Part shown: positions 36,876 to 47,403 of the stretch, one piece after another
Layout: every line of letters begins with the position of its first letter
Numbering within the stretch: position 1 is the stretch's first letter
NCBI RefSeq assembly: GCF_006345805.1
Contig: NW_021834319.1
Span: forward strand, 1 to 50,015
Source of the DNA: Octopus sinensis
Taxonomy: Eukaryota
Direction: 5' to 3'
DNA length: 50,015 bases
Translations under genes and position numbers: made by a program
Notes under the pieces: model-generated
Told to the model about the DNA's origin: nothing
What the model saw: the letters and a program-made list of their open reading frames with translations, nothing else
Databases searched by the model: none

Positions 36876-37100
36876 GATACGCGCGTGTGTGTACCGGTGG
36901 GAGAGAGCGAAATTCAATGGGTCGAACGAATATGCAATGAGCTATTTAAATCTTCGCAGTTGATTGATTTTGTCCCTCATCATCACTCCTGTCCGAATCC
37001 GATCAAACAATTCTTGTTTTGATTTTTAACCGATACACAATACATATATAAATAAATAAAATCATGACAAATGGTACCCAAGTATATATATATATACATA

Positions 37101-37258
37101 GGCGCAGGCGTAGCTGTGTGATAAATAGCTTGCTTGCCAACCACATGGTTCCGGGCTCTGTTTCACTGCGTGGCACCTTGGCTAAGAGTATTCTACTATA
37201 GCCTCGGGCTGACCAAAGCCTTGTGAGTGGATTTGGTCGACGGAAACTGAAAGAAGCC
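37101..37258 (+). mobile_element. 5' half of a family O (tRNA/CORE-like) SINE, split by the CR1 insertion
   Basis: GGCGCAGGCGTAGCTGTGTG..CACTGCGTGGCACCTTGG..GGAAACTGAAAGAAGCC matches the intact copies at 45322 and 46441. Confidence 0.85.
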
Positions 37259-37359
37259 AAATAATCATAAACCAAATAATCATAAACAACCAAATAATCA
37301 TAAACAACCAAATAATCATGAAACAACCAAATAATCAGAAACAACCAAATAATCAAAAA
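37257..37359 (+). repeat. Six copies of a 15-19-bp unit CCAAATAATCATAAACAA at the LINE 5' end
   Basis: Units start at 37257, 37272, 37290, 37308, 37327 and 37345. Confidence 0.9.
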
Positions 37360-37468
37360 CTCACACCCTTAAGAGAGAACATTTATATATATACACTTCT
37401 TTAACTCCCAAGAAAGAATATATATATTTTCAAAAATCAAAAGAAAAACAAACAAAAGAAAAACAAAC

Positions 37469-38419
37469 ATGACTAACTTGCAGGCCTGCAACAGACGAAA
37501 TTGGTCTGATAACGAAATTGATGTTTTAATAAACACATGGCTCTCTCTTTCCCAAACAGAAAATCTAAATGTCTTGTGTTTGAATGAGATTGCCGAAAAA
37601 ACATCACAAGTGGTCAACACACGATCCGTCAAACAGATTCGTAGCAAGTTGAAACATATCGAAGTATCTTTCAAACTGATAAGAGGCCATTATGAAAAGC
37701 TTCTACATATTTTCACAGTTCAAGAACAACAACAGCTAGAAAATCAGCAGCCACAACAACAACAACAACAGAATGAGCCACTCCTGGTTCCCAGCACAAT
37801 GGCTGACATCGGTCAGGCACAACAACAACAACAACAGCCACAGCAACAAGAACAACAACAGCCACTCCTCAACTCTAGCTTACTAGACAATTCACTAAAT
37901 GCCAGTATCTTTTCACCGCTCTCACAGCAACCACCACAATTATCATCATCATCATCACCACCGCTGCCACCATCGTCTTCTATCACCAAAAATACCAACA
38001 GAAAACCAAATAAGAAACCACTGCCCTCTTCCCCCACATCACCACCTCAATACTACTGCAGTAACAAAAACTTAAAGAAACATAGGAAGCAGAATGCGCC
38101 CCCCACGGCTCAAACAAGAAATCCCCAAATATGCCGCTATTCACTGCGCCAGAGACTCTGCACAAATAGTGACTGCATCTTCACGCATCTACCCGGCACT
38201 AGACGCACTACCGGCCAAGGCCAAAGCACGCATCCCACAATAACATCAACACCACCAAATAGTAAATCGAAATTCAAAACACACACAACTCGGAGTCCCA
38301 AAATCTGCCGGTATTCCCAACGTGAGAGAACATGTCTACTGAGTGACTGTCCCTTCACTCATCTTCCAGGGACCCGACGCACAAACAGAAACGGGGCCTC
38401 AAGCCACACACAAACCTGA
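37469..38419 (+). CDS. LINE ORF1, 316 aa: N-terminal Myb/SANT(trihelix)-like segment, polyQ/S/P linker, two C-x8-C-x4-C-x3-H zinc fingers
   Basis: RRNWSDNEIDVLINTW..IAEK..TRSVKQIRSKLKHI at the N-terminus; CRYSLRQRLCTNSDCIFTH (38132-38188) and CRYSQRERTCLLSDCPFTH (38306-38362). It lies directly upstream of the APE-RT ORF. Confidence 0.8.
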   Translation: MTNLQACNRRNWSDNEIDVLINTWLSLSQTENLNVLCLNEIAEKTSQVVNTRSVKQIRSKLKHIEVSFKLIRGHYEKLLHIFTVQEQQQLENQQPQQQQQQNEPLLVPSTMADIGQAQQQQQQPQQQEQQQPLLNSSLLDNSLNASIFSPLSQQPPQLSSSSSPPLPPSSSITKNTNRKPNKKPLPSSPTSPPQYYCSNKNLKKHRKQNAPPTAQTRNPQICRYSLRQRLCTNSDCIFTHLPGTRRTTGQGQSTHPTITSTPPNSKSKFKTHTTRSPKICRYSQRERTCLLSDCPFTHLPGTRRTNRNGASSHTQT

Positions 38420-38655
38420 ATAACAAAAAATAGAAACACACCATGCTGCAGTAATGCTGGTCCAGTCTTTTCAGGAAGACACAAAAACAACACAACAAAA
38501 GTGGAAACTACAACCTATCCAACAGTGCAACCACACCTCCAGCCAAAAACTGCTCCCTAAGCAGGAAAATTCTTTTTTAGCCATGTTGAACATGGCAAAA
38601 AGATACACAAAAACATTCTAGCCATCACTCAACACCATCCTATGCTATTACCCCA

Positions 38656-41600
38656 GTGCACCAATTCCCCACATTGCTGCCACTAACACACACAAAAAAT
38701 CCAAGCCCCCTGCAACAGTCAAAACCAGCCACTACACTAACCTCCACATTCCTACTCAATGCACAAGGTGTCAGCCCTTCCATCAATGCACAAAAATGGA
38801 AGGTCCAATTCATTGAAGACTGGTTGGTAACCATTCACACCACATCCCTTTCTTCATTCTCACTGAGACCCACCTTGACAACTCCCACTTGGAAGCCGAA
38901 GTGAGAGTGAAGAATTTCACAACCATCCGCGCGGATCGTATCGGCAGGAGGAAGGGTGGAACTGCCATTTTCCTGCATGATTCATTTACGGCAGATGGAA
39001 ATAGTATATTCTCCAACGGCTACTGTGAATCAGTCACCGTGCACAACAAAGCCAATGACCTGACAGTAATTGGGCTCTATAGGCCGCCCCAAACACCCAT
39101 ACTGTGCTTTAAAGAATGCCTCAACAGCATTAAGTGCTTTATTCAACAGTGCCATTCTAGCAACATACTCATGATGGGAGACTTCAATCTACCCTGTGTT
39201 GACTGGACTACAAACTGTTTGAAACCAAGCACTCCCGCCTCAACCGCTGACAAAGAAGCAGCAGAGTCACTTTTCGACTTTACGAATGAGTTTTTCTTGT
39301 CCCAACTTGTCCTTGCACCAACAAGACATCAGAACATTTTGGACCTAGTGTTTAGTAACCACACTAACACTATACATAACGTTACAGTGGAAAAACCCTT
39401 CTTTCAGACCATGACATGGTTCTCTGTAACATGAAATTCCACCAGCCGAAAGCTAATCCTAGTGACCTTCCTCCAGCCCACCCATTTGACAACATGGATC
39501 TCCATAAAGCCAACTGGGATGCAATCAGGAACGAGCTATCAAATGTTGACTGGTCCTTTACACATACACACATCTCCACCACCATAAAACATCTTGGCAG
39601 ATCTTTGTAGACACCGTCACAGACATATGTGCAAAACACTCCCCACCAAGACCTGTGAACAAAAAGTGCAGAATCCCCCAAAACAGAAAAACCATTATCA
39701 GAAAAATAAAAAGAACAAACAAAAAAATTAACAAACTAAAGTACTGCCAACAGCAACACACACATTCGACGGCTATCGCACTGCTTGAATCCAAAAAATA
39801 ACCTCCAACAATGCATGAAGACCCTCATCAATAACCAAAGATCAGCTGAGGAGAAGTGGGCCATTGAAAAAATCAAACTCAACCCCAAAGTGTTCTTTTC
39901 ATTTGCGAGGAAACGCAGGGTCACTGTCTCCACTGTAGGCCCTCTAATTGACGAAACTGGCACTCTCCAAGATAATGCAAATCCATGGCCGAGATACTGC
40001 AGAAACAATACTGCTCTGTTTTCAGCAATCCTGATATGGCCGATCTGGGCTGTATCAGTGATGTCAACCCCCAACACACTATATCGGACATAACGTTTAG
40101 TGCCCCTGATGTCTTAGCGGCGATAAACGAAATAAAACACAATTCAGCAGTAGGCCCCGATAGGTTCCCTGCTTGTGTCCTGAAGGTGTGTCGACACCAA
40201 CTTGCATCTCCCCTTGCTAATCTGTGGAGAAACTCACTGGATGCTGGCTATATTCCAAAAAACCTTCTGTCCCAGTCTGTTGTCCCAGTTTTCAAAAAGG
40301 GAAACAAGTCCCTTGCAGTGAATTACCGTCCGATCTCACTCACCTCTCATATCATCAAGGTATTTGAGAGGGTGGTGAGATCTCGAATAACCCAATTTCT
40401 GGAAAGCAACAGACGGCTGATCTCCAACCAACATGGGTTCCGTAATGGAAGGGACTGCCTAACGCAGCTCCTGCATCACTTTGAGGACATTTTGAGAGCT
40501 TTGGGAGAGGGCTCCAACACCGATGTCATCTACCTTGATTTCAGTAAGGCCTTCGACAGGGTCGATCACAAGATCCTATTGAAAAAACTATCCAACATTG
40601 GTGTCTCTGGAAAGTTACTGAAATGGATTAAGTGTTTCCTGACAGACAGATCTCAACATGTTGTAGTTGAAGGGGTAAAATCAAGCCCAGCCAAAGTCAG
40701 TAGTGGCGTTCCGCAAGGCACTGTGCTGGGCCCACTTCTTTTCATCATTTACATTAATGACATTAATGACATCATCAAGCACAGCAACATAAAAATCTTT
40801 GCAGATGACTCCAAGCTACAGAAGGTCATAAATGAGGCGAGTGACCGGACATGCCTTCAGTCAGATCTACTGGCTGTTATCCAATGGGCATAAAAAAACA
40901 ATATGCTGCTGAACGAGGATAAATTTGAGCTAATCCACTTTGGAAAAGAGGATGCCCTGAAACTCCCATACTCCCTTCCTTCAGGTGAAACTCTCGCGGC
41001 GTCCAACAACATCAGAGACTTGGGAGTAATTGTGGACAACAACGTAAGCTGGGCCACTCATATAAACACCAAAGTTGACATGGCCCGCAGAATGTGTTCC
41101 TGGATTCTCAGAACTTTCCAGTCGAGAGATATCCACACCATTATCCTTCTCTTCTCCACTTTTGCCCGACCCCACCTTGAATACTGTTGTCCACTGTGGT
41201 CTCCCCACACAATACAAGGTATCATAAAAGTTGAAGCACCTCAAAGGGCAATCACAAAAAGATAGATGGCATGACAGGCCTCGACTATTGGGGTCGACTA
41301 GAAAAGCTAAACTCTATTCTCTCCAACGTCGTCGTGAGCGCTACATCATCTGCATGATGTGGAAAATATTCCATCAGCATTGCCCAAATGATGTTGGCAT
41401 CACCTTTAGGTACATCCAAGGCTTGGGCCCCGTGCCATCCGCCCAAAAACAAATCGCACTCTCATCTCATAACAACATACGGCACAATTATTTCACCTCA
41501 ATTGGCCCCGCTCTCTTTAACATTACACCAAAACACATTAAAACAGAAACTGACCCTATAGGGTTCAAGAAGTCTTTGGACAGATTCCTTCAAGAAATCC

Positions 41601-41680
41601 CGGATAAACCCCCTACACCCGGATATGTCTCTGTAAACAATAACTCTCTACTTGAGTGGGCCATAGTGCCCAAATTCTGA
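38656..41680 (+). pseudogene. LINE ORF2 (AP endonuclease + reverse transcriptase), frameshifted with one nonsense codon
   Basis: APE motifs: LLNAQG, ILTETHL, RADR..RKGGTA, GLYRPP, MGDFNLP, PTRHQNILDLVF, SDH. RT motifs: NYRPISLTS, QHGFRNGRDCLTQL, YLDFSKAFDRVDH, SGVPQGTVLGPLLF, IFADDSK, RDLGV, RPHLEYC, YSLQRRRERY. TAA at 40891. Confidence 0.92.
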
Positions 41681-41771
41681 CTTGAAAGACTTCACCAGGT
41701 GGTGCTATTAAGTTAGACATGGCCTGGGCCAATAATGGCCGAAACCTATCAAAGTATCAAAGTATCAAAAG

Positions 41772-41803
41772 TATATATATATATATATATATATACATAT
41801 ATA

Positions 41804-41842
<39 letters not shown>

Positions 41843-42050
41843 ATATGTTTGTGTGCCTGTGTTTGGCCCTTAACATCGCTTGATAACCGGTGCAGGTGTG
41901 TTTATGTCTCCGTAACTTAGCGTTTCGGAAAGGGACCGATAGAATAAGTTCTGGGGTCGATTTGTTCGACTAAAGGCGGTGCTCCAGCATGGCCGCAGTC
42001 AATTAATTGAAACAAATAAAAGAATAAGAGAATAGAATAAAAGAATATAT
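41772..42050 (+). mobile_element. Internal microsatellite and 3' half of the family O SINE begun at 37101
   Basis: CATCGCTTGATAACCG..GGGGTCGATTTGTTCGACTAAAGGCGGTGCTCCAGCATGGCCGCAGTC. Confidence 0.85.
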
Positions 42051-42206
42051 ATATATATATATATATATATAACGGACATATAAATGTATATGTATATATA
42101 TATATATATATGTATGTGTATATATACATACATGCACACACACACACACGCATATATATATATATACATACATACATACATACATACATACATACATACA
42201 TACATA

Positions 42207-42766
42207 CCTGGTGGCTGCCCCCTCGTTATCGAGTATGGCCATTGCACGAAGCTTAATCAATGTTGTTATCGTGCAATGCCTGTGCAAGAAGATTTTTTTA
42301 AAGTGAGGAAAGGTTGTGCACTGAGTCAATCCCACTCACTAAGCAACAGCAGCCATAATCCGAAAAGAAGAACAAGTCAACATCATCGGTAACCACTGAG
42401 CCGCAGGTTTTATGTCGGAGTTATCCCAGTTACCTGAGTTACCTTCTCCTAGAAGGATGCCCTAACAAAGGCTAGGAGTCCTTCACTCCCAATGGTTTAA
42501 CCGCGCGATCGGGTATTCAGTCCGATTATTTCTATGTCCGCACGCATGATACAGCCTTAAGACATTTATTGGATGGCCGTTGACTCTCAAGAGTTCCTCC
42601 GCCCTTTGACGGGTTTTGTTTTTCATCCCGCACGGTGTCCAATAAACACCCCCCTCACCAAGCAAGGTTGGTGGGGTAGCCGGTTTAGTCGCCGACGACT
42701 TGACCATGCAACAGGTTGTACTGGGTTACATGTTACCAGTAGCACTCGAAAGTAACCTGACATACT
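42207..42766 (-). mobile_element. Non-coding retroposon body, RTE-5'UTR-like, with a (TATG)n 3' tail
   Basis: The minus strand contains GGCGACTAAACC and GGGCATCCTTCTAGGAGAAGGTAACTC..TAAAACC, which resemble RTE 5' UTR motifs as recalled. It ends GGGCAGCCACCAGG followed by (TATG)n. Confidence 0.55.
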
Positions 42767-42865
42767 CGTTCGAGGTGTCGATGTTCACTGAGTCCTACAA
42801 TTCGCATAAGTTCACGCGGATAGCTGCGCTCTTCATCGACGGACGAGCCGAGTGATCCCGCCCAA
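42767..42865 (-). rRNA. 5.8S rRNA-derived fragment (5' ~100 nt; not an rDNA unit)
   Basis: Minus strand GGATCACTCGGCTCGTCCGTCGATGAAGAGCGCAGCTATCCGCGTGAACTTATGCGAATTGTAGGACTCAGTGAACATCGACACCTCGAACG is ungapped against metazoan 5.8S as recalled (about 13 substitutions in ~91 nt versus the vertebrate sequence). There is no flanking ITS, 18S or 28S. Confidence 0.9.
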
Positions 42866-42886
42866 CATACATACATACATACATAC

Positions 42887-42917
<31 letters not shown>

Positions 42918-42923
42918 CATACA

Positions 42924-42987
<64 letters not shown>

Positions 42988-43041
42988 TATGTATACATAC
43001 ATACATACATACATACATACATACATACATACATACATACA

Positions 43042-43075
<34 letters not shown>

Positions 43076-44088
43076 CATCCACACATGCATACATACATGC
43101 ATATATAAATATATATATTTCAGAAATAAAATATTGAGAAACCTCAGCATTGTTTATTTGGTATGATATCAGCCTCTATCGCAACACAGTTCGTTGTTTG
43201 AAGGGTATAAGCGCCGCCCTATACCCCAGTATATTCGTGATTAATCGATACTAATTCTGTCATTCAAACAGAAAACTTTTGATTGAAGCTCATTAGTTTT
43301 TTTTTAGTCAAAACAATATAATGATATAAATACGATGATTAAAAATTGTAGTTATGATTGAAAAAAACAGACTATACAAACCAATTGCCGATATTGTATT
43401 TTGCTCTTTTTGTCTATTTACTTGATAGATTTTTCATCTTCAGCCATTCGTTGTCGTCTTATATGTTTGTTTTTTGATAAAAGGAATCTGTTATTTTCTT
43501 TTTTCAAATGCCATGATCGCTTTTCTTCCAGTTGGCCTCTCAATTTGCCTCCGTAGTAGAAACATTTCAACAATCTTCATCAAGCCATCTTTTTCGTCGC
43601 CTAAGGGTGGAGAGATTCTAGTACAGGCCTGCCTCACTAGCCATGCGTAGTCAATGTAAATTGGAAAAGTGCGCTGGATATCATTCACTCATGACAGAAT
43701 TAAAACATGACTGTAAATGACTATTCCTTGAGGCTGACGGAAAGTTTAATGAATTATAAGAGAGACAAAAATATACAAATAATAAGAAAAGAAAGGAAAC
43801 TGCTGCTGAATTGTGGGAAAAGTCCATTGGAGCTGATCAAGGAGCGAAATAAAACAACAACACAAAAAGAACAAGCGAATATTTATATATATTCTACTTG
43901 ATTTGGGGTGTAGTTCAGGAAAATAGAAATAAAAATCTTACTGAGAAGGGGGGGGCGGTCGGCGTTGTTGGAAAGACATTGTTTTAGCAAAAAAGAAAGT
44001 TGTATATCTTTATGACAATGAGGTAGATATCAAGTCTATGTCTTTCACTATGGTTACATATAGAAATTTAGGTGAACACACGCGCACG

Positions 44089-45323: not shown

Positions 45324-45688
45324 TCTTTACTCTTTTACTCTTTTACTTGTTTCAGTCATTTGACTGCGGCCATGCTGGAGCACCACCTTTTAGTACTTAT
45401 TCTATCGGTCTCTTTTTGCCGAACCGCTAAGTGACGGGGACCTAAACACACCAGCATCGGTTGTCAAGCAATGCTAGGGGGACAACACAGACACACAAAC
45501 ACACGCATACATATATATACATATATACGACAGGCTTCTTTCAGTTTCCGTCTACCAAATCCACTCACAAGGCATTGGTCGGCCGGGGCTATAGCAGAAG
45601 ACACTTGCCCAAGATGCCACGCAGTGGGACTGAACCCGCAACCGTGTGGTTGGTTAGCAAGCTACTTACCACACAGCCACTCCTGCGC

Positions 45689-45743
<55 letters not shown>

Positions 45744-45888
45744 TACGACGGGCTTCTTTCAGTTTCCATCAACCAAATCACTCACAAGGCTTCTATAGTA
45801 GAAGACATTGCCCAAGGTACCACGCAGTGGGACTGAACCCGGAACCATGTTGTTGTGAAGCAAGCTTTTTACCACACAGCCACTCCTA
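45056..45888 (-). mobile_element. Family O SINE (head 45746-45888, tail 45056-45262) with a second complete copy (45322-45689) nested in its internal microsatellite
   Basis: Order on the minus strand: head, (TA)n, complete SINE, (TA)n, tail. Confidence 0.8.
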
Positions 45889-46440: not shown

Positions 46441-46630
46441 ACTTTACTCTTTTACTTGTTTCAGTCATTTGACTGCGGCCATGCTGGAGCACCGCCTTTA
46501 GTCGAGCAAATCGACCCCGGGACTTATTCTTTGTAAGCCCAGCACTTATTCTATCGGTCTCTTTTGCCGAACCGTCAGGTGACGGGGACGTAAACACACC
46601 AGCATAGGTTGTCAAGCAATGCTAGGGGGA

Positions 46631-46724
<94 letters not shown>

Positions 46725-46895
46725 CATATATACGACAGGCTTCTTTCAGTTTCTGTCTATAAAATCCACTCACAAGGCATTGGTCGGCCCGGGGCTATAG
46801 CAGAAGATACTTGCCCAAGATGCCACGCAGTGGGACTGAACCCGGAACCATGTGGTTGGTTAGCAAGCTATTTACCACACAGCCACTCCTGCGCC
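46441..46895 (-). mobile_element. Complete family O SINE
   Basis: Head GGCGCAGGAGTGGCTGTGTGGTAA..GGTTCAGTCCCAC, CORE-like TCTTGGGCAAGTATCTT, internal microsatellite, tail ..GAAACAAGTAAAAGAGT. Confidence 0.9.
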
Positions 46896-46920
46896 TATAT
46901 ATATATATATATATTTATTT

Positions 46921-47403
46921 ATTTATGGTGAACTCAACTCTACTAAGCGACTACCACATAAGCCGAGCAAAAGGTATAAAGACCGTGTGAAGGAAAACCT
47001 GAAGAAATCAGATATGAACAAAAGTGATTGGGAAGAAGATGTTCTAGATGGGAACAAGTGGAGTGGTGCTGTTAGGACTGGTTTCAATGCCTAGAAGGAA
47101 AAGATGATTGAGCACTCTAGAGTTAAAAGGGCCTGTCGCAAAGGAACAATTGGGACTGGAATCAACAGTGAACATTGGATATGTATTATATGTGGCCATG
47201 TTCTGTTGTCAAAAGCAGGATATGTGAATCATATGAAGTCACATAAAAATCGTAATGCCCAGATAGGTAATGATCTTGGACACCAACCACCTCTCACGGC
47301 TTGTGGACTTAAAAGACATATGCTGGTTCGCAAAAACACTCCTTCAGAATCAGGTTCCAAAGGGCAAAGATATAGAATAAACTTAAATAATATTAGTCAC
47401 TAG
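46921..47403 (+). mobile_element. RTE-clade LINE 3' fragment with a C-terminal C2H2-type finger
   Basis: IYGELNSTKRLPHKPSKRYKDRVKENLKK..WEEDVLDGNKWSGAV..F.A*..CIICGHVLLSKAGYVNHMKSH in one frame with TAG at 47092, plus a decayed second GLKRHM motif. Confidence 0.8.

What the first reader, a model, noticed from the sequence alone, without database searches (positions are those of the whole stretch)
42165..42870. 5.8S-rRNA head fused to an RTE-like body: candidate 5.8S-derived SINE or rRNA chimera
Seen: on the minus strand, (TATG)n is followed by ~99 nt of 5.8S starting within a few bases of the mature 5' end. It is joined via AG to a ~560-bp non-coding body ending in a (TATG)n tail. No ITS1, ITS2 or other rDNA is present. 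Established: SINE heads are known from tRNA, 7SL, 5S, snRNA and 28S fragments, and non-autonomous RTE derivatives often supply SINE bodies and tandem-repeat tails. I know of no described 5.8S-headed family. Inference: the start near the mature 5' end points to an RNA template, either a template switch onto 5.8S during reverse transcription or a propagating family. Only one copy is in this window.
Basis: partly seen in the sequence, partly recalled or inferred. Interest (0 to 1): 0.8.

Follow-up and report, generated by a model that had tools for sequence, protein, structure and literature searches.

The report
Lone 5.8S rRNA–retroposon chimera
About 100 bases of the animal's own 5.8S ribosomal RNA are fused to a non-coding, retroposon-like repeat inside a (TATG)n microsatellite, most likely as a one-off by-product of reverse transcription and not a new family of mobile elements.

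Summary
On the minus strand, window 42864-42767 is a sense copy of 5.8S rRNA nt 6-105 (Rfam 70 bits, E 2e-15). It is 94/98 identical to genuine 5.8S in complete rDNA units fetched from public assemblies. A 7-nt AGTATGT follows, then a 552-nt non-coding body (42759-42208). (TATG)n lies on both sides, and no other rDNA is in the window.

The RTE label for the body has no support. Its only relative found is a 160-nt non-coding core, 80% identical (E 1e-34), on a 630-nt metagenome contig that carries no 5.8S. The body does end in a 10-bp stem-loop and a microsatellite tail, as LINE-dependent retroposons do.

The head has no Pol III promoter boxes. No second copy exists in the 50 kb window. No junction match turned up in any collection I could search, but none of them holds the host genome, so the decisive copy count could not be run.

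Best reading (about 0.5): one retroposition event in which the reverse transcriptase switched from the body RNA to 5.8S rRNA, as in U6/L1 chimeras. Rivals are a propagating 5.8S-headed SINE (about 0.17) and two separate insertions (about 0.15).

The parts
42867..43115 (-). 5' flank: compound microsatellite, (TATG)n interrupted by (TG)n(TA)n; either the target tract or its remainder
   Evidence: TRF period 4, 62 copies, 42865-43115; sequence read
42767..42864 (-). 5.8S rRNA-derived head: sense copy of 5.8S nt 6-105, lacking the 3' third (G+C-rich helix and the 28S-pairing end)
   Evidence: Rfam RF00002, 70 bits, E 2e-15; 94/98 identical to genuine 5.8S of L001/L002 and sharing their lineage-specific GGCTATCCGCGTGAAC variant
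42760..42766 (-). Junction filler AGTATGT; GTATGT equals 1.5 units of the flanking microsatellite
   Evidence: Read directly. A microsatellite-phase 6-mer within 3 nt of a junction is expected by chance about 0.7% of the time
42208..42759 (-). Non-coding body, 552 nt, 48% G+C; unique within the window
   Evidence: No second copy in 50 kb; no ORF over 80 codons, no Pfam or Rfam hit; no similarity to ETS, ITS, 18S or 28S of six rDNA loci
42570..42729 (-). Conserved core of the body, shared with an unrelated contig (L007 304-468)
   Evidence: 80% identity over 166 columns, E 1e-34. Mismatches are spread evenly over codon positions, 11/6/8, so it is non-coding. Found through the spurious ORF P0012
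42222..42278 (-). 3'-terminal perfect 10-bp stem with 19-nt loop (42240-42278) plus a 4-bp hairpin (42222-42233), 15-33 nt upstream of the tail
   Evidence: RNA fold of the last 93 nt: -23.7 kcal/mol, z = -2.55, 1 of 200 shuffles as stable
42120..42207 (-). 3' tail or flank: 11 perfect GTAT units (42164-42207), running into (AT)n, (GT)n and a short imperfect stretch of the repeat
   Evidence: TRF period 4, 22 copies; sequence

Best explanation
This is a single chimeric retrocopy.

Proposed sequence of events:
1. A non-coding, SINE-like or 5'-truncated retroposon RNA was copied by a host LINE reverse transcriptase. This is the body: a conserved core, a 3' stem-loop and a (GUAU)n tail.
2. The cDNA was primed on a nick inside a (TATG)n microsatellite. 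Such tracts cover about 5% of this window and can pair with the tail.
3. When the enzyme reached the 5' end of that RNA, it did not finish. It jumped onto 5.8S rRNA, one of the most abundant RNAs in the cell.
4. It landed just upstream of the stable G+C-rich helix, at about nt 105, and copied to within a few bases of the mature 5' end.
5. The product was joined to the upstream microsatellite.

Shown: the anatomy, the orientation, the ends of the 5.8S piece, its close identity to genuine 5.8S, the non-coding repeat nature of the body, and the absence of a promoter-like head.

Inferred: the template switch itself, retroposition of the body, and the singleness of the event.

The 5.8S piece has no function here. 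It is a molecular fossil of reverse-transcriptase template jumping.
For: - The 5.8S piece is in the same orientation as the body. It begins at nt 6 of the mature RNA, with no ITS1 upstream and no ITS2, 18S or 28S anywhere in the window. That is what a copy of processed rRNA looks like, not a copy of rDNA.
- It ends at nt 105, immediately before the G+C-rich hairpin.
- It is 94/98 identical to the nearest genuine 5.8S found and shares its lineage-specific variant, so it is a fairly young copy of a real rRNA.
- The body behaves as a repeat. A 160-nt non-coding core recurs at 80% identity on an independent contig, and many of the differences are CpG-to-TpG/CpA changes on the L007 side.
- The body ends in a strong stem-loop followed by a microsatellite tail. 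The element sits inside the same microsatellite. Octopus RTE has a microsatellite directly after its ORF (PMC9115989), and the 3' microsatellite-like repeats of RTE-related SINEs correlate with their target-site profile (PMC6007223).
- There is no Pol III A or B box in the head, and a TTTT run lies inside the body.
- No second copy is in the window. No junction-spanning ORF or DNA was found elsewhere. The core homologue has no 5.8S.
Against: - The host genome could not be searched, so 'single copy' is not shown.
- Classical template-switch chimeras (U6/L1; from my own knowledge) carry the small RNA up to its 3' end. Here the 5.8S is cut at nt 105.
- The 7-nt AGTATGT between head and body is not predicted by a simple jump. 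It needs a donor RNA that began in a microsatellite flank, or filler synthesis.
- No target-site duplication can be read, because both flanks are repeats.
- That the body is a retroposon rests only on its tail, its stem-loop and its repeat nature. No partner LINE was identified. The L007 relative sits next to palindromic, foldback-like DNA.
Confidence: 0.5

Rival explanations
1. It is a member of a propagating 5.8S-headed SINE family. A chimera like the one described became a master copy and spread, mobilised by a LINE that recognises its 3' stem-loop and (TATG)n tail.
For: - The layout is that of a SINE: a ~100-nt small-RNA head, a body with a conserved central core of about 160-175 nt, a 3' stem-loop and a repeat tail, about 660 nt in all, and non-coding.
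- Mollusc SINE superfamilies are defined by such central domains joined to varying heads and tails, and heads not derived from tRNA exist (LINE-derived heads, PMC4758252; snRNA-derived heads, PMC4494074).
- The head is only about 4% diverged from genuine 5.8S.
Against: - 5.8S is made by Pol I within the pre-rRNA and has no internal promoter. No A or B box is in the head, and a TTTT lies in the body.
- Only one copy is present in 50 kb of a repeat-rich genome.
- The core homologue lacks 5.8S.
- No junction-spanning ORF occurs among 5.8 billion protein clusters. All ten hits are genuine rDNA.
- A search of 1.84 billion representatives with the body ORF found a single relative.
- No 5.8S-derived SINE was found in the open literature searched.
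Confidence: 0.17
2. Two separate events occurred in one fragile microsatellite. The body element inserted into (TATG)n. Independently, a 5.8S cDNA fragment was inserted or captured during break repair 6-7 nt upstream of it.
For: - The 5.8S piece is bounded on both sides by microsatellite sequence: (GTAT)nGT on the 5' side and GTATGT on the 3' side. This is as expected if it landed inside the tract.
- (ACAT)n tracts are abundant here, 2.5 kb of 50 kb, and long microsatellites are break-prone (my own knowledge).
Against: - It needs a second rare event within 7 nt of the first element's 5' end, in a tract of about 340 nt, and in the same orientation. That is roughly 1% a priori.
- 5.8S RNA has no GUAU run next to nt 105 to pair with an (ATAC)n primer.
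Confidence: 0.15
3. It is a DNA-level rearrangement or rDNA orphon. A piece of an rDNA unit, or of a 5.8S gene interrupted by a mobile element at nt 105 and co-transcribed with it, was moved into the microsatellite.
For: - rDNA-specific retroelements that are co-transcribed with rRNA, and their non-autonomous derivatives, are known (PMC3414825).
- The body is richer in G+C (48%) than the window (37%).
Against: - The body has no similarity to ETS, ITS1, ITS2, 18S, 28S or IGS in six related rDNA loci. Spacers diverge fast, though, so only the host's own rDNA would settle this.
- The core recurs in a non-rDNA context.
- No ribozyme was detected.
- The tail and both flanks point to a microsatellite target, not a 5.8S target.
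Confidence: 0.08

Closest known systems
Bipartite chimeric retrocopies made by LINE reverse-transcriptase template switching (U6/L1, U3, U5, 7SL and 5S rRNA chimeras of mammals; template jumping of R2 reverse transcriptase). From my own knowledge; not retrieved here.
   Same: A sense copy of an abundant small structural RNA, reaching its 5' end, is fused in the same orientation to the 5' side of a retroposed sequence that carries the 3' tail. There is no promoter logic, and such products are usually single copies.
   Different: The partner is 5.8S rRNA, for which I found no described case. It is truncated internally at nt 105 instead of being copied from its 3' end. The host is apparently a cephalopod. 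The tail is a (TATG)n microsatellite, not poly(A). A 7-nt microsatellite-like filler sits at the junction.
SINEs with unusual heads: 5S-derived SINE3, snRNA-derived SINEU (PMC4494074), 28S-derived SINE28, and LINE-promoter 'LP-SINEs' of molluscs (PMC4758252)
   Same: Modular head, conserved core and tail; a non-coding element of about 0.66 kb; a head taken from a structural RNA.
   Different: Those are families with many copies and a head that drives, or is thought to drive, transcription. Here only one copy is known, and the head has no promoter boxes.
Microsatellite-tailed retroposons mobilised by RTE, CR1/L2 or Dong-R4-type LINEs (octopus RTE-2_OV, PMC9115989; RTE-related SINEs, PMC6007223; RTE-generated microsatellite families, PMC2887409)
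   Same: A tandem-repeat 3' tail, and insertion next to or inside the same repeat. A 3' stem-loop upstream of the tail also fits LINE-dependent retroposons (my own knowledge).
   Different: No sequence similarity to any LINE 3' end could be shown. The only LINE near it in the window, a CR1/L2-like element at 37373-41770, has a different 3' end and a (GTATCAAA)n tail.
rDNA-specific retroelements and their non-autonomous derivatives (R2 and R2 SIDEs; PMC3414825)
   Same: An rRNA sequence lies directly upstream of a non-coding retroelement body.
   Different: Those sit inside 28S or 18S genes in the rDNA array and process their 5' end with a ribozyme. This element is outside rDNA, inside a microsatellite, and no ribozyme was detected.

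Membership tests
SINE (propagating family with a small-RNA-derived head) | Many dispersed copies sharing the same head/body junction with different flanks | not testable with these tools
   The host genome is in none of the collections. One copy in the window. Junction pattern: 0 hits in metagenome, prokaryote-genome and viral contigs. Junction ORF: only genuine rDNA hits.
SINE (propagating family with a small-RNA-derived head) | A head that carries an internal Pol III promoter (A and B boxes, or a 5S-type control region) | tested here: not met
   No A or B box within 2 mismatches in the first 105 nt. One A-box-like site at element nt 464 without a B box. TTTT at nt 501. 5.8S is a Pol I product (established knowledge).
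SINE (propagating family with a small-RNA-derived head) | A short non-coding element with a 3' end shared with a partner LINE | tested here: inconclusive
   Non-coding and 659 nt long. Stem-loop plus microsatellite tail present. No LINE with the same 3' end in the window. No repeat library was available.
RTE-derived non-autonomous element | Body or 3' end homologous to an RTE-clade LINE | not testable with these tools
   No Repbase or Dfam library was on hand. No similarity to anything in the window. No Pfam hit in any frame. The stored part of the octopus transcriptome supplement has no match to core k-mers.
RTE-derived non-autonomous element | Microsatellite-like 3' tail | tested here: met
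   (GTAT)n tail at 42120-42207. This feature is shared with CR1/L2 and R4/Dong-type elements, so it does not discriminate.
Template-switch chimeric retrocopy (U6/L1 type) | The 5' part is a sense copy of an abundant small RNA reaching its mature 5' end, without flanking gene or spacer sequence | tested here: met
   5.8S nt 6-105, with no ITS1 or other rDNA.
Template-switch chimeric retrocopy (U6/L1 type) | The small RNA is copied from its own 3' end (full length) | tested here: not met
   The copy stops at nt 105 of 159; the 3' helix and end are absent.
Template-switch chimeric retrocopy (U6/L1 type) | The whole chimera is flanked by one target-site duplication, and the 3' part carries the retroposon tail | tested here: inconclusive
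   The tail is present. Both flanks are the same microsatellite, so a duplication cannot be read.
Functional 5.8S rRNA gene / rDNA unit | Full-length 5.8S (about 155-160 nt) between ITS1 and ITS2, next to 18S and 28S | tested here: not met
   Only nt 6-105 are present. No SSU or LSU hit in the window. Genuine units L001-L006 show the full arrangement.
Retroelement with a 5' HDV-like self-cleaving ribozyme | Nested double-pseudoknot ribozyme at the 5' end of the element | tested here: not met
   No ribozyme family at E up to 10 in 41500-43600. My own loose topology scan gave one AU-rich mid-body hit per strand against 0.28 expected in shuffles (maximum 3), and none at the 5' end. That scan was not validated on a positive control.

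The most novel reading that the evidence does not exclude
The element is a copy, or the founder, of a SINE family whose head derives from 5.8S rRNA. That head class has not been described. It would have been born when a core-bearing mollusc SINE body lost its tRNA head and gained a 5.8S head by template switching. It would then be transcribed from outside, or from a cryptic promoter such as TATA-like microsatellite sequence upstream.
Probability: 0.15. Interest if true: 0.7.

Novelty: new member of a known kind. Interest (0 to 1): 0.3.

Why it matters
If it is a one-off, it is a clean natural record of reverse-transcriptase template jumping onto 5.8S rRNA in a cephalopod-type genome. It adds 5.8S to the small RNAs known to be caught this way. 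It also shows that microsatellite-tailed LINE machinery in molluscs makes the same kind of chimeras as mammalian L1. That is useful for annotation, because such pieces trigger false rRNA gene calls, but it is not surprising.

If the junction recurs across the genome, it would be the first 5.8S-headed SINE. It would then pose a real question: how does a head without a Pol III promoter get transcribed?

Tried and rejected
1. Other copies in the window: BLAST with word size 7 found none beyond chance.

2. Other copies through spurious ORFs:
- The 74-aa body ORF gave no candidate.
- The antisense ORF over the 3' end gave nothing.
- The junction ORF returned only genuine rDNA.
- The full HMMER search gave one true relative, P0012 on contig L007. 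The other three hits (P0011, P0013, P0014) look like compositional or repeat matches.

3. Exact DNA scans with the junction, the 3' end plus tail, and the conserved core: 0 hits in metagenome, prokaryote-genome and viral collections. The first two metagenome scans used window-specific strings before I knew which part is conserved. In hindsight a core pattern would have been the better use of that cap.

4. Body as rDNA spacer: no similarity to six rDNA loci. This is not decisive, because spacers evolve fast.

5. Body as coding remnant: no Pfam hit in ten stop-free segments and no codon-position bias in the core.

6. tRNA-like or ribozyme content: ARAGORN found none, Rfam found none, and my own HDV-like topology scan was at chance level.

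7. Terminal inverted repeats in the body: none.

8. Same 3' end at the other (ACAT)n tract borders in the window: none.

9. Identity of L001 (GCA_024449705.1): not found in the literature.

10. Core k-mers in paper texts and in the stored part of the octopus transcriptome supplement: none.

11. Host genome in the protein collection: none of ten window ORFs is there. An orthologous empty-site test was therefore impossible.

Full report
**What is there**

Read on the minus strand, the region is as follows:
- a compound (TATG)n microsatellite, 43115-42867
- a 5.8S-like stretch, 42864-42767
- seven bases, AGTATGT, 42766-42760
- a 552-nt unique sequence, 42759-42208
- eleven perfect GTAT units that run into (AT)n, (GT)n and a short imperfect stretch of the repeat, 42207-42120

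Rfam's 5.8S model is the only family in the whole window that passes its gathering score: 70 bits against 42, E 2e-15. A permissive rescan of 41500-43600 adds only microsatellite-driven miRNA look-alikes, all far below their cut-offs. There is no 18S, 28S or tRNA in the window.

**The head is a copy of a real 5.8S**

I searched the ORF that happens to run through the head and junction against the protein collection. It returned ten spurious ORFs that all lie on genuine rDNA. Their contigs carry complete 18S-5.8S-28S units.

The head is 96.8% identical over 93 nt to the 5.8S of L001 (NCBI GCA_024449705.1) and L002 (a Logan assembly). It is 93.5% identical to four marine-metagenome units. It shares with L001/L002 the variant GGCTATCCGCGTGAAC, where the others have GGCCAGCCGCGAGAAC.

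A local alignment places it on 5.8S nt 6-105 of 159, with four mismatches and one 2-nt gap. So it starts a few bases inside the mature 5' end. It stops at ...CTCGAACG, just before the G+C-rich helix. The Rfam alignment over the last third is gaps and chance matches.

These rDNA units have expanded 18S (2.1-2.9 kb) and a 5.2-kb 28S. From memory, that fits coleoid cephalopods. Also from memory, the SINE at 41845-42010 is the common octopus SINE. I therefore take the host to be an octopod and the head to come from its own rRNA. Both points are inference, not tool results.

**The body**

It is non-coding:
- The longest stop-free frame is 80 codons.
- Ten such segments have no Pfam match even at E 10.

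It has no second copy in the window. It has no terminal inverted repeats. It resembles no ETS, ITS, 18S, 28S or IGS of the six rDNA loci.

An exhaustive HMMER search of 1.84 billion representative proteins with the 80-codon frame gave one true relative. This is P0012, a spurious 152-aa ORF on a 630-nt ENA metagenome contig (L007).

At the DNA level, element nt 138-297 (window 42729-42570) matches L007 304-468 at 80% identity, E 1e-34. Mismatches fall evenly on the three codon positions, 11/6/8. Many of the differences are CpG-to-TpG/CpA changes on the L007 side. This is therefore a non-coding repeat core, not a gene.

L007 has no 5.8S. Upstream of the core it carries a 50-nt direct repeat and a 106-nt palindrome. 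Outside the core the two sequences are unrelated.

The body ends with a perfect 10-bp stem and 19-nt loop, then a 4-bp hairpin, 15-33 nt before the tail. The fold has z = -2.55, with 1 of 200 shuffles as stable.

A conserved core, a 3' stem-loop and a repeat tail are the modules of LINE-dependent short retroposons. Mollusc SINE superfamilies are defined by central domains of 45-150 bp combined with different heads and tails (PMC4758252). I could not compare the core with the named domains, because no repeat library was on hand.

**'RTE-like' is not shown**

The tail fits RTE. The octopus RTE-2_OV has a microsatellite starting at the end of its ORF (PMC9115989), and RTE-related SINEs show a link between their 3' microsatellite-like repeats and their target-site profile (PMC6007223).

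Repeat tails also occur in CR1/L2 and R4/Dong-type elements (my own knowledge). Dong-R4, CR1, RTE and L1-Tx1 are all listed as recently active in O. vulgaris (PMC13282606).

The one LINE next to the element, at 37373-41770 on the plus strand, has an endonuclease and a reverse transcriptase, a Myb/SANT-like first ORF, and a (GTATCAAA)n tail. Its 3' end is different.

**Family or one-off**

The decisive test is a count of this junction in the host genome. It cannot be run here. None of ten window ORFs is in the 15-billion-protein collection, and the DNA collections hold prokaryotes, viruses and JGI metagenomes. Exact scans with the junction, the 3' end and the core found nothing.

The indirect evidence leans against a family:
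- There is one copy in 50 kb of repeat-rich DNA.
- No A or B box lies in the head, and a TTTT lies in the body. 5.8S is transcribed by Pol I as part of the precursor, so the head brings no promoter.
- The only homologue of the body has no 5.8S.
- No junction-spanning ORF was found among 5.8 billion protein clusters, although rDNA ORFs from unannotated eukaryote assemblies are present there.

The literature I could search holds no 5.8S-derived SINE.

**Mechanism**

The head is sense-oriented, has no spacer, and reaches almost to the mature 5' end. This points to processed rRNA as the template.

The simplest path is target-primed reverse transcription of the body RNA on a nick in the (TATG)n tract. 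Perfect tracts of this repeat cover 2,492 nt of the window, all in one orientation. A template switch at the 5' end of that RNA onto 5.8S rRNA would follow.

This is the known route to U6/L1 and 5S/L1 chimeras, and R2 reverse transcriptase performs it in vitro (my own knowledge).

Two features do not fit the textbook case:
- The 5.8S is entered internally, at nt 105. I attribute this to the stable helix just downstream or to a 5.8S fragment.
- The junction carries GTATGT, expected by chance about 0.7% of the time. One explanation is a donor RNA that began in the microsatellite flank of its parent copy, which is what a microsatellite-targeting family would have. The other is two separate insertions.

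The two-insertion reading needs a second rare event within 7 nt of the first and in the same orientation, so I rank it lower.

I found no ribozyme: Rfam gave nothing and my own unvalidated topology scan was at chance level. An active 5' ribozyme would in any case have removed the head.

**Verdict**

The 'RTE' label is unsupported. The '5.8S-derived SINE' reading remains possible, at about 0.15-0.2, but has no positive evidence.

As it stands, this is a new example of a known kind of event and of modest interest. One BLAST against the source genome would settle it.

Noticed in passing
window 37373-41770 (+): A degenerate LINE broken into several frames. It has a first ORF with a Myb/SANT-like domain and CCCH fingers (37469-38419), an AP-endonuclease (38889-39434), a reverse transcriptase (39985-40893), a C-terminal ORF (41231-41680) and a (GTATCAAA)n-like tail ending about 41770. 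It looks CR1/L2-like and is unrelated to the finding.
   Followed up: partly
window 41845-42010 (-), tail 41772-41840: A SINE copy (…GACTGCGGCCATGCTGGAGCACCGCC…). From memory I recognise it as the very abundant octopus SINE. Its (CA)n(TA)n tail abuts the tail of the LINE on the other strand. This is my basis for calling the host an octopod.
   Followed up: no
window 17130-19847: A 2.7-kb (ATAC)n array of 684 units. Across the window, perfect (ACAT)n tracts total 2,492 nt on the plus strand against 46 nt in the opposite orientation, a striking strand bias.
   Followed up: partly
window 37006-37368 (-), 45435-45833 (+), 46626-46990 (+): Three copies of another short repeat, with shared translations such as …PRCHAVGLNPEPCGWLASYLPHSHS…. 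Each lies next to (TA)n and is probably a second SINE family.
   Followed up: no
window 46930-47390 (+): A 5'-truncated LINE 3' end. It has a C-terminal motif typical of LINE ORF2 tails, followed by a C2H2-like finger (…CIICGHVLLSKAGYVNHMKSH…). No (TATG)n tail.
   Followed up: no
window 16820-16883: A G+C-rich 11-nt tandem repeat, (GTGACGGTCGC) x 5.8, in otherwise A+T-rich DNA.
   Followed up: no
L007 1-315: The metagenome contig that shares the core has a 106-nt palindrome (arms 4-109 and 114-219, 88% complementary). It also has a 50-nt exact direct repeat (1-50 and 266-315) whose last 13 nt are also present just upstream of the core in the window element. It looks foldback- or MITE-like.
   Followed up: partly
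L001 1080-3944; L003 3242-5839 and 6982-12223; L004 3219-5337: The rDNA units with the matching 5.8S type have strongly expanded rRNAs: 18S of 2.1-2.9 kb and 28S of 5.2 kb. L003 also has a 28S fragment in inverted orientation in its spacer, at 1390-1552.
   Followed up: no
P0011 (Dreissena polymorpha KAH3700261.1): The best-scoring hit of the representative search is a 770-aa hypothetical protein made of about a dozen tandem repeat units of roughly 50 aa. It is 29% identical to the body ORF over 12 stretches. This is probably a compositional or repeat artefact, but it was not examined at the DNA level.
   Followed up: no
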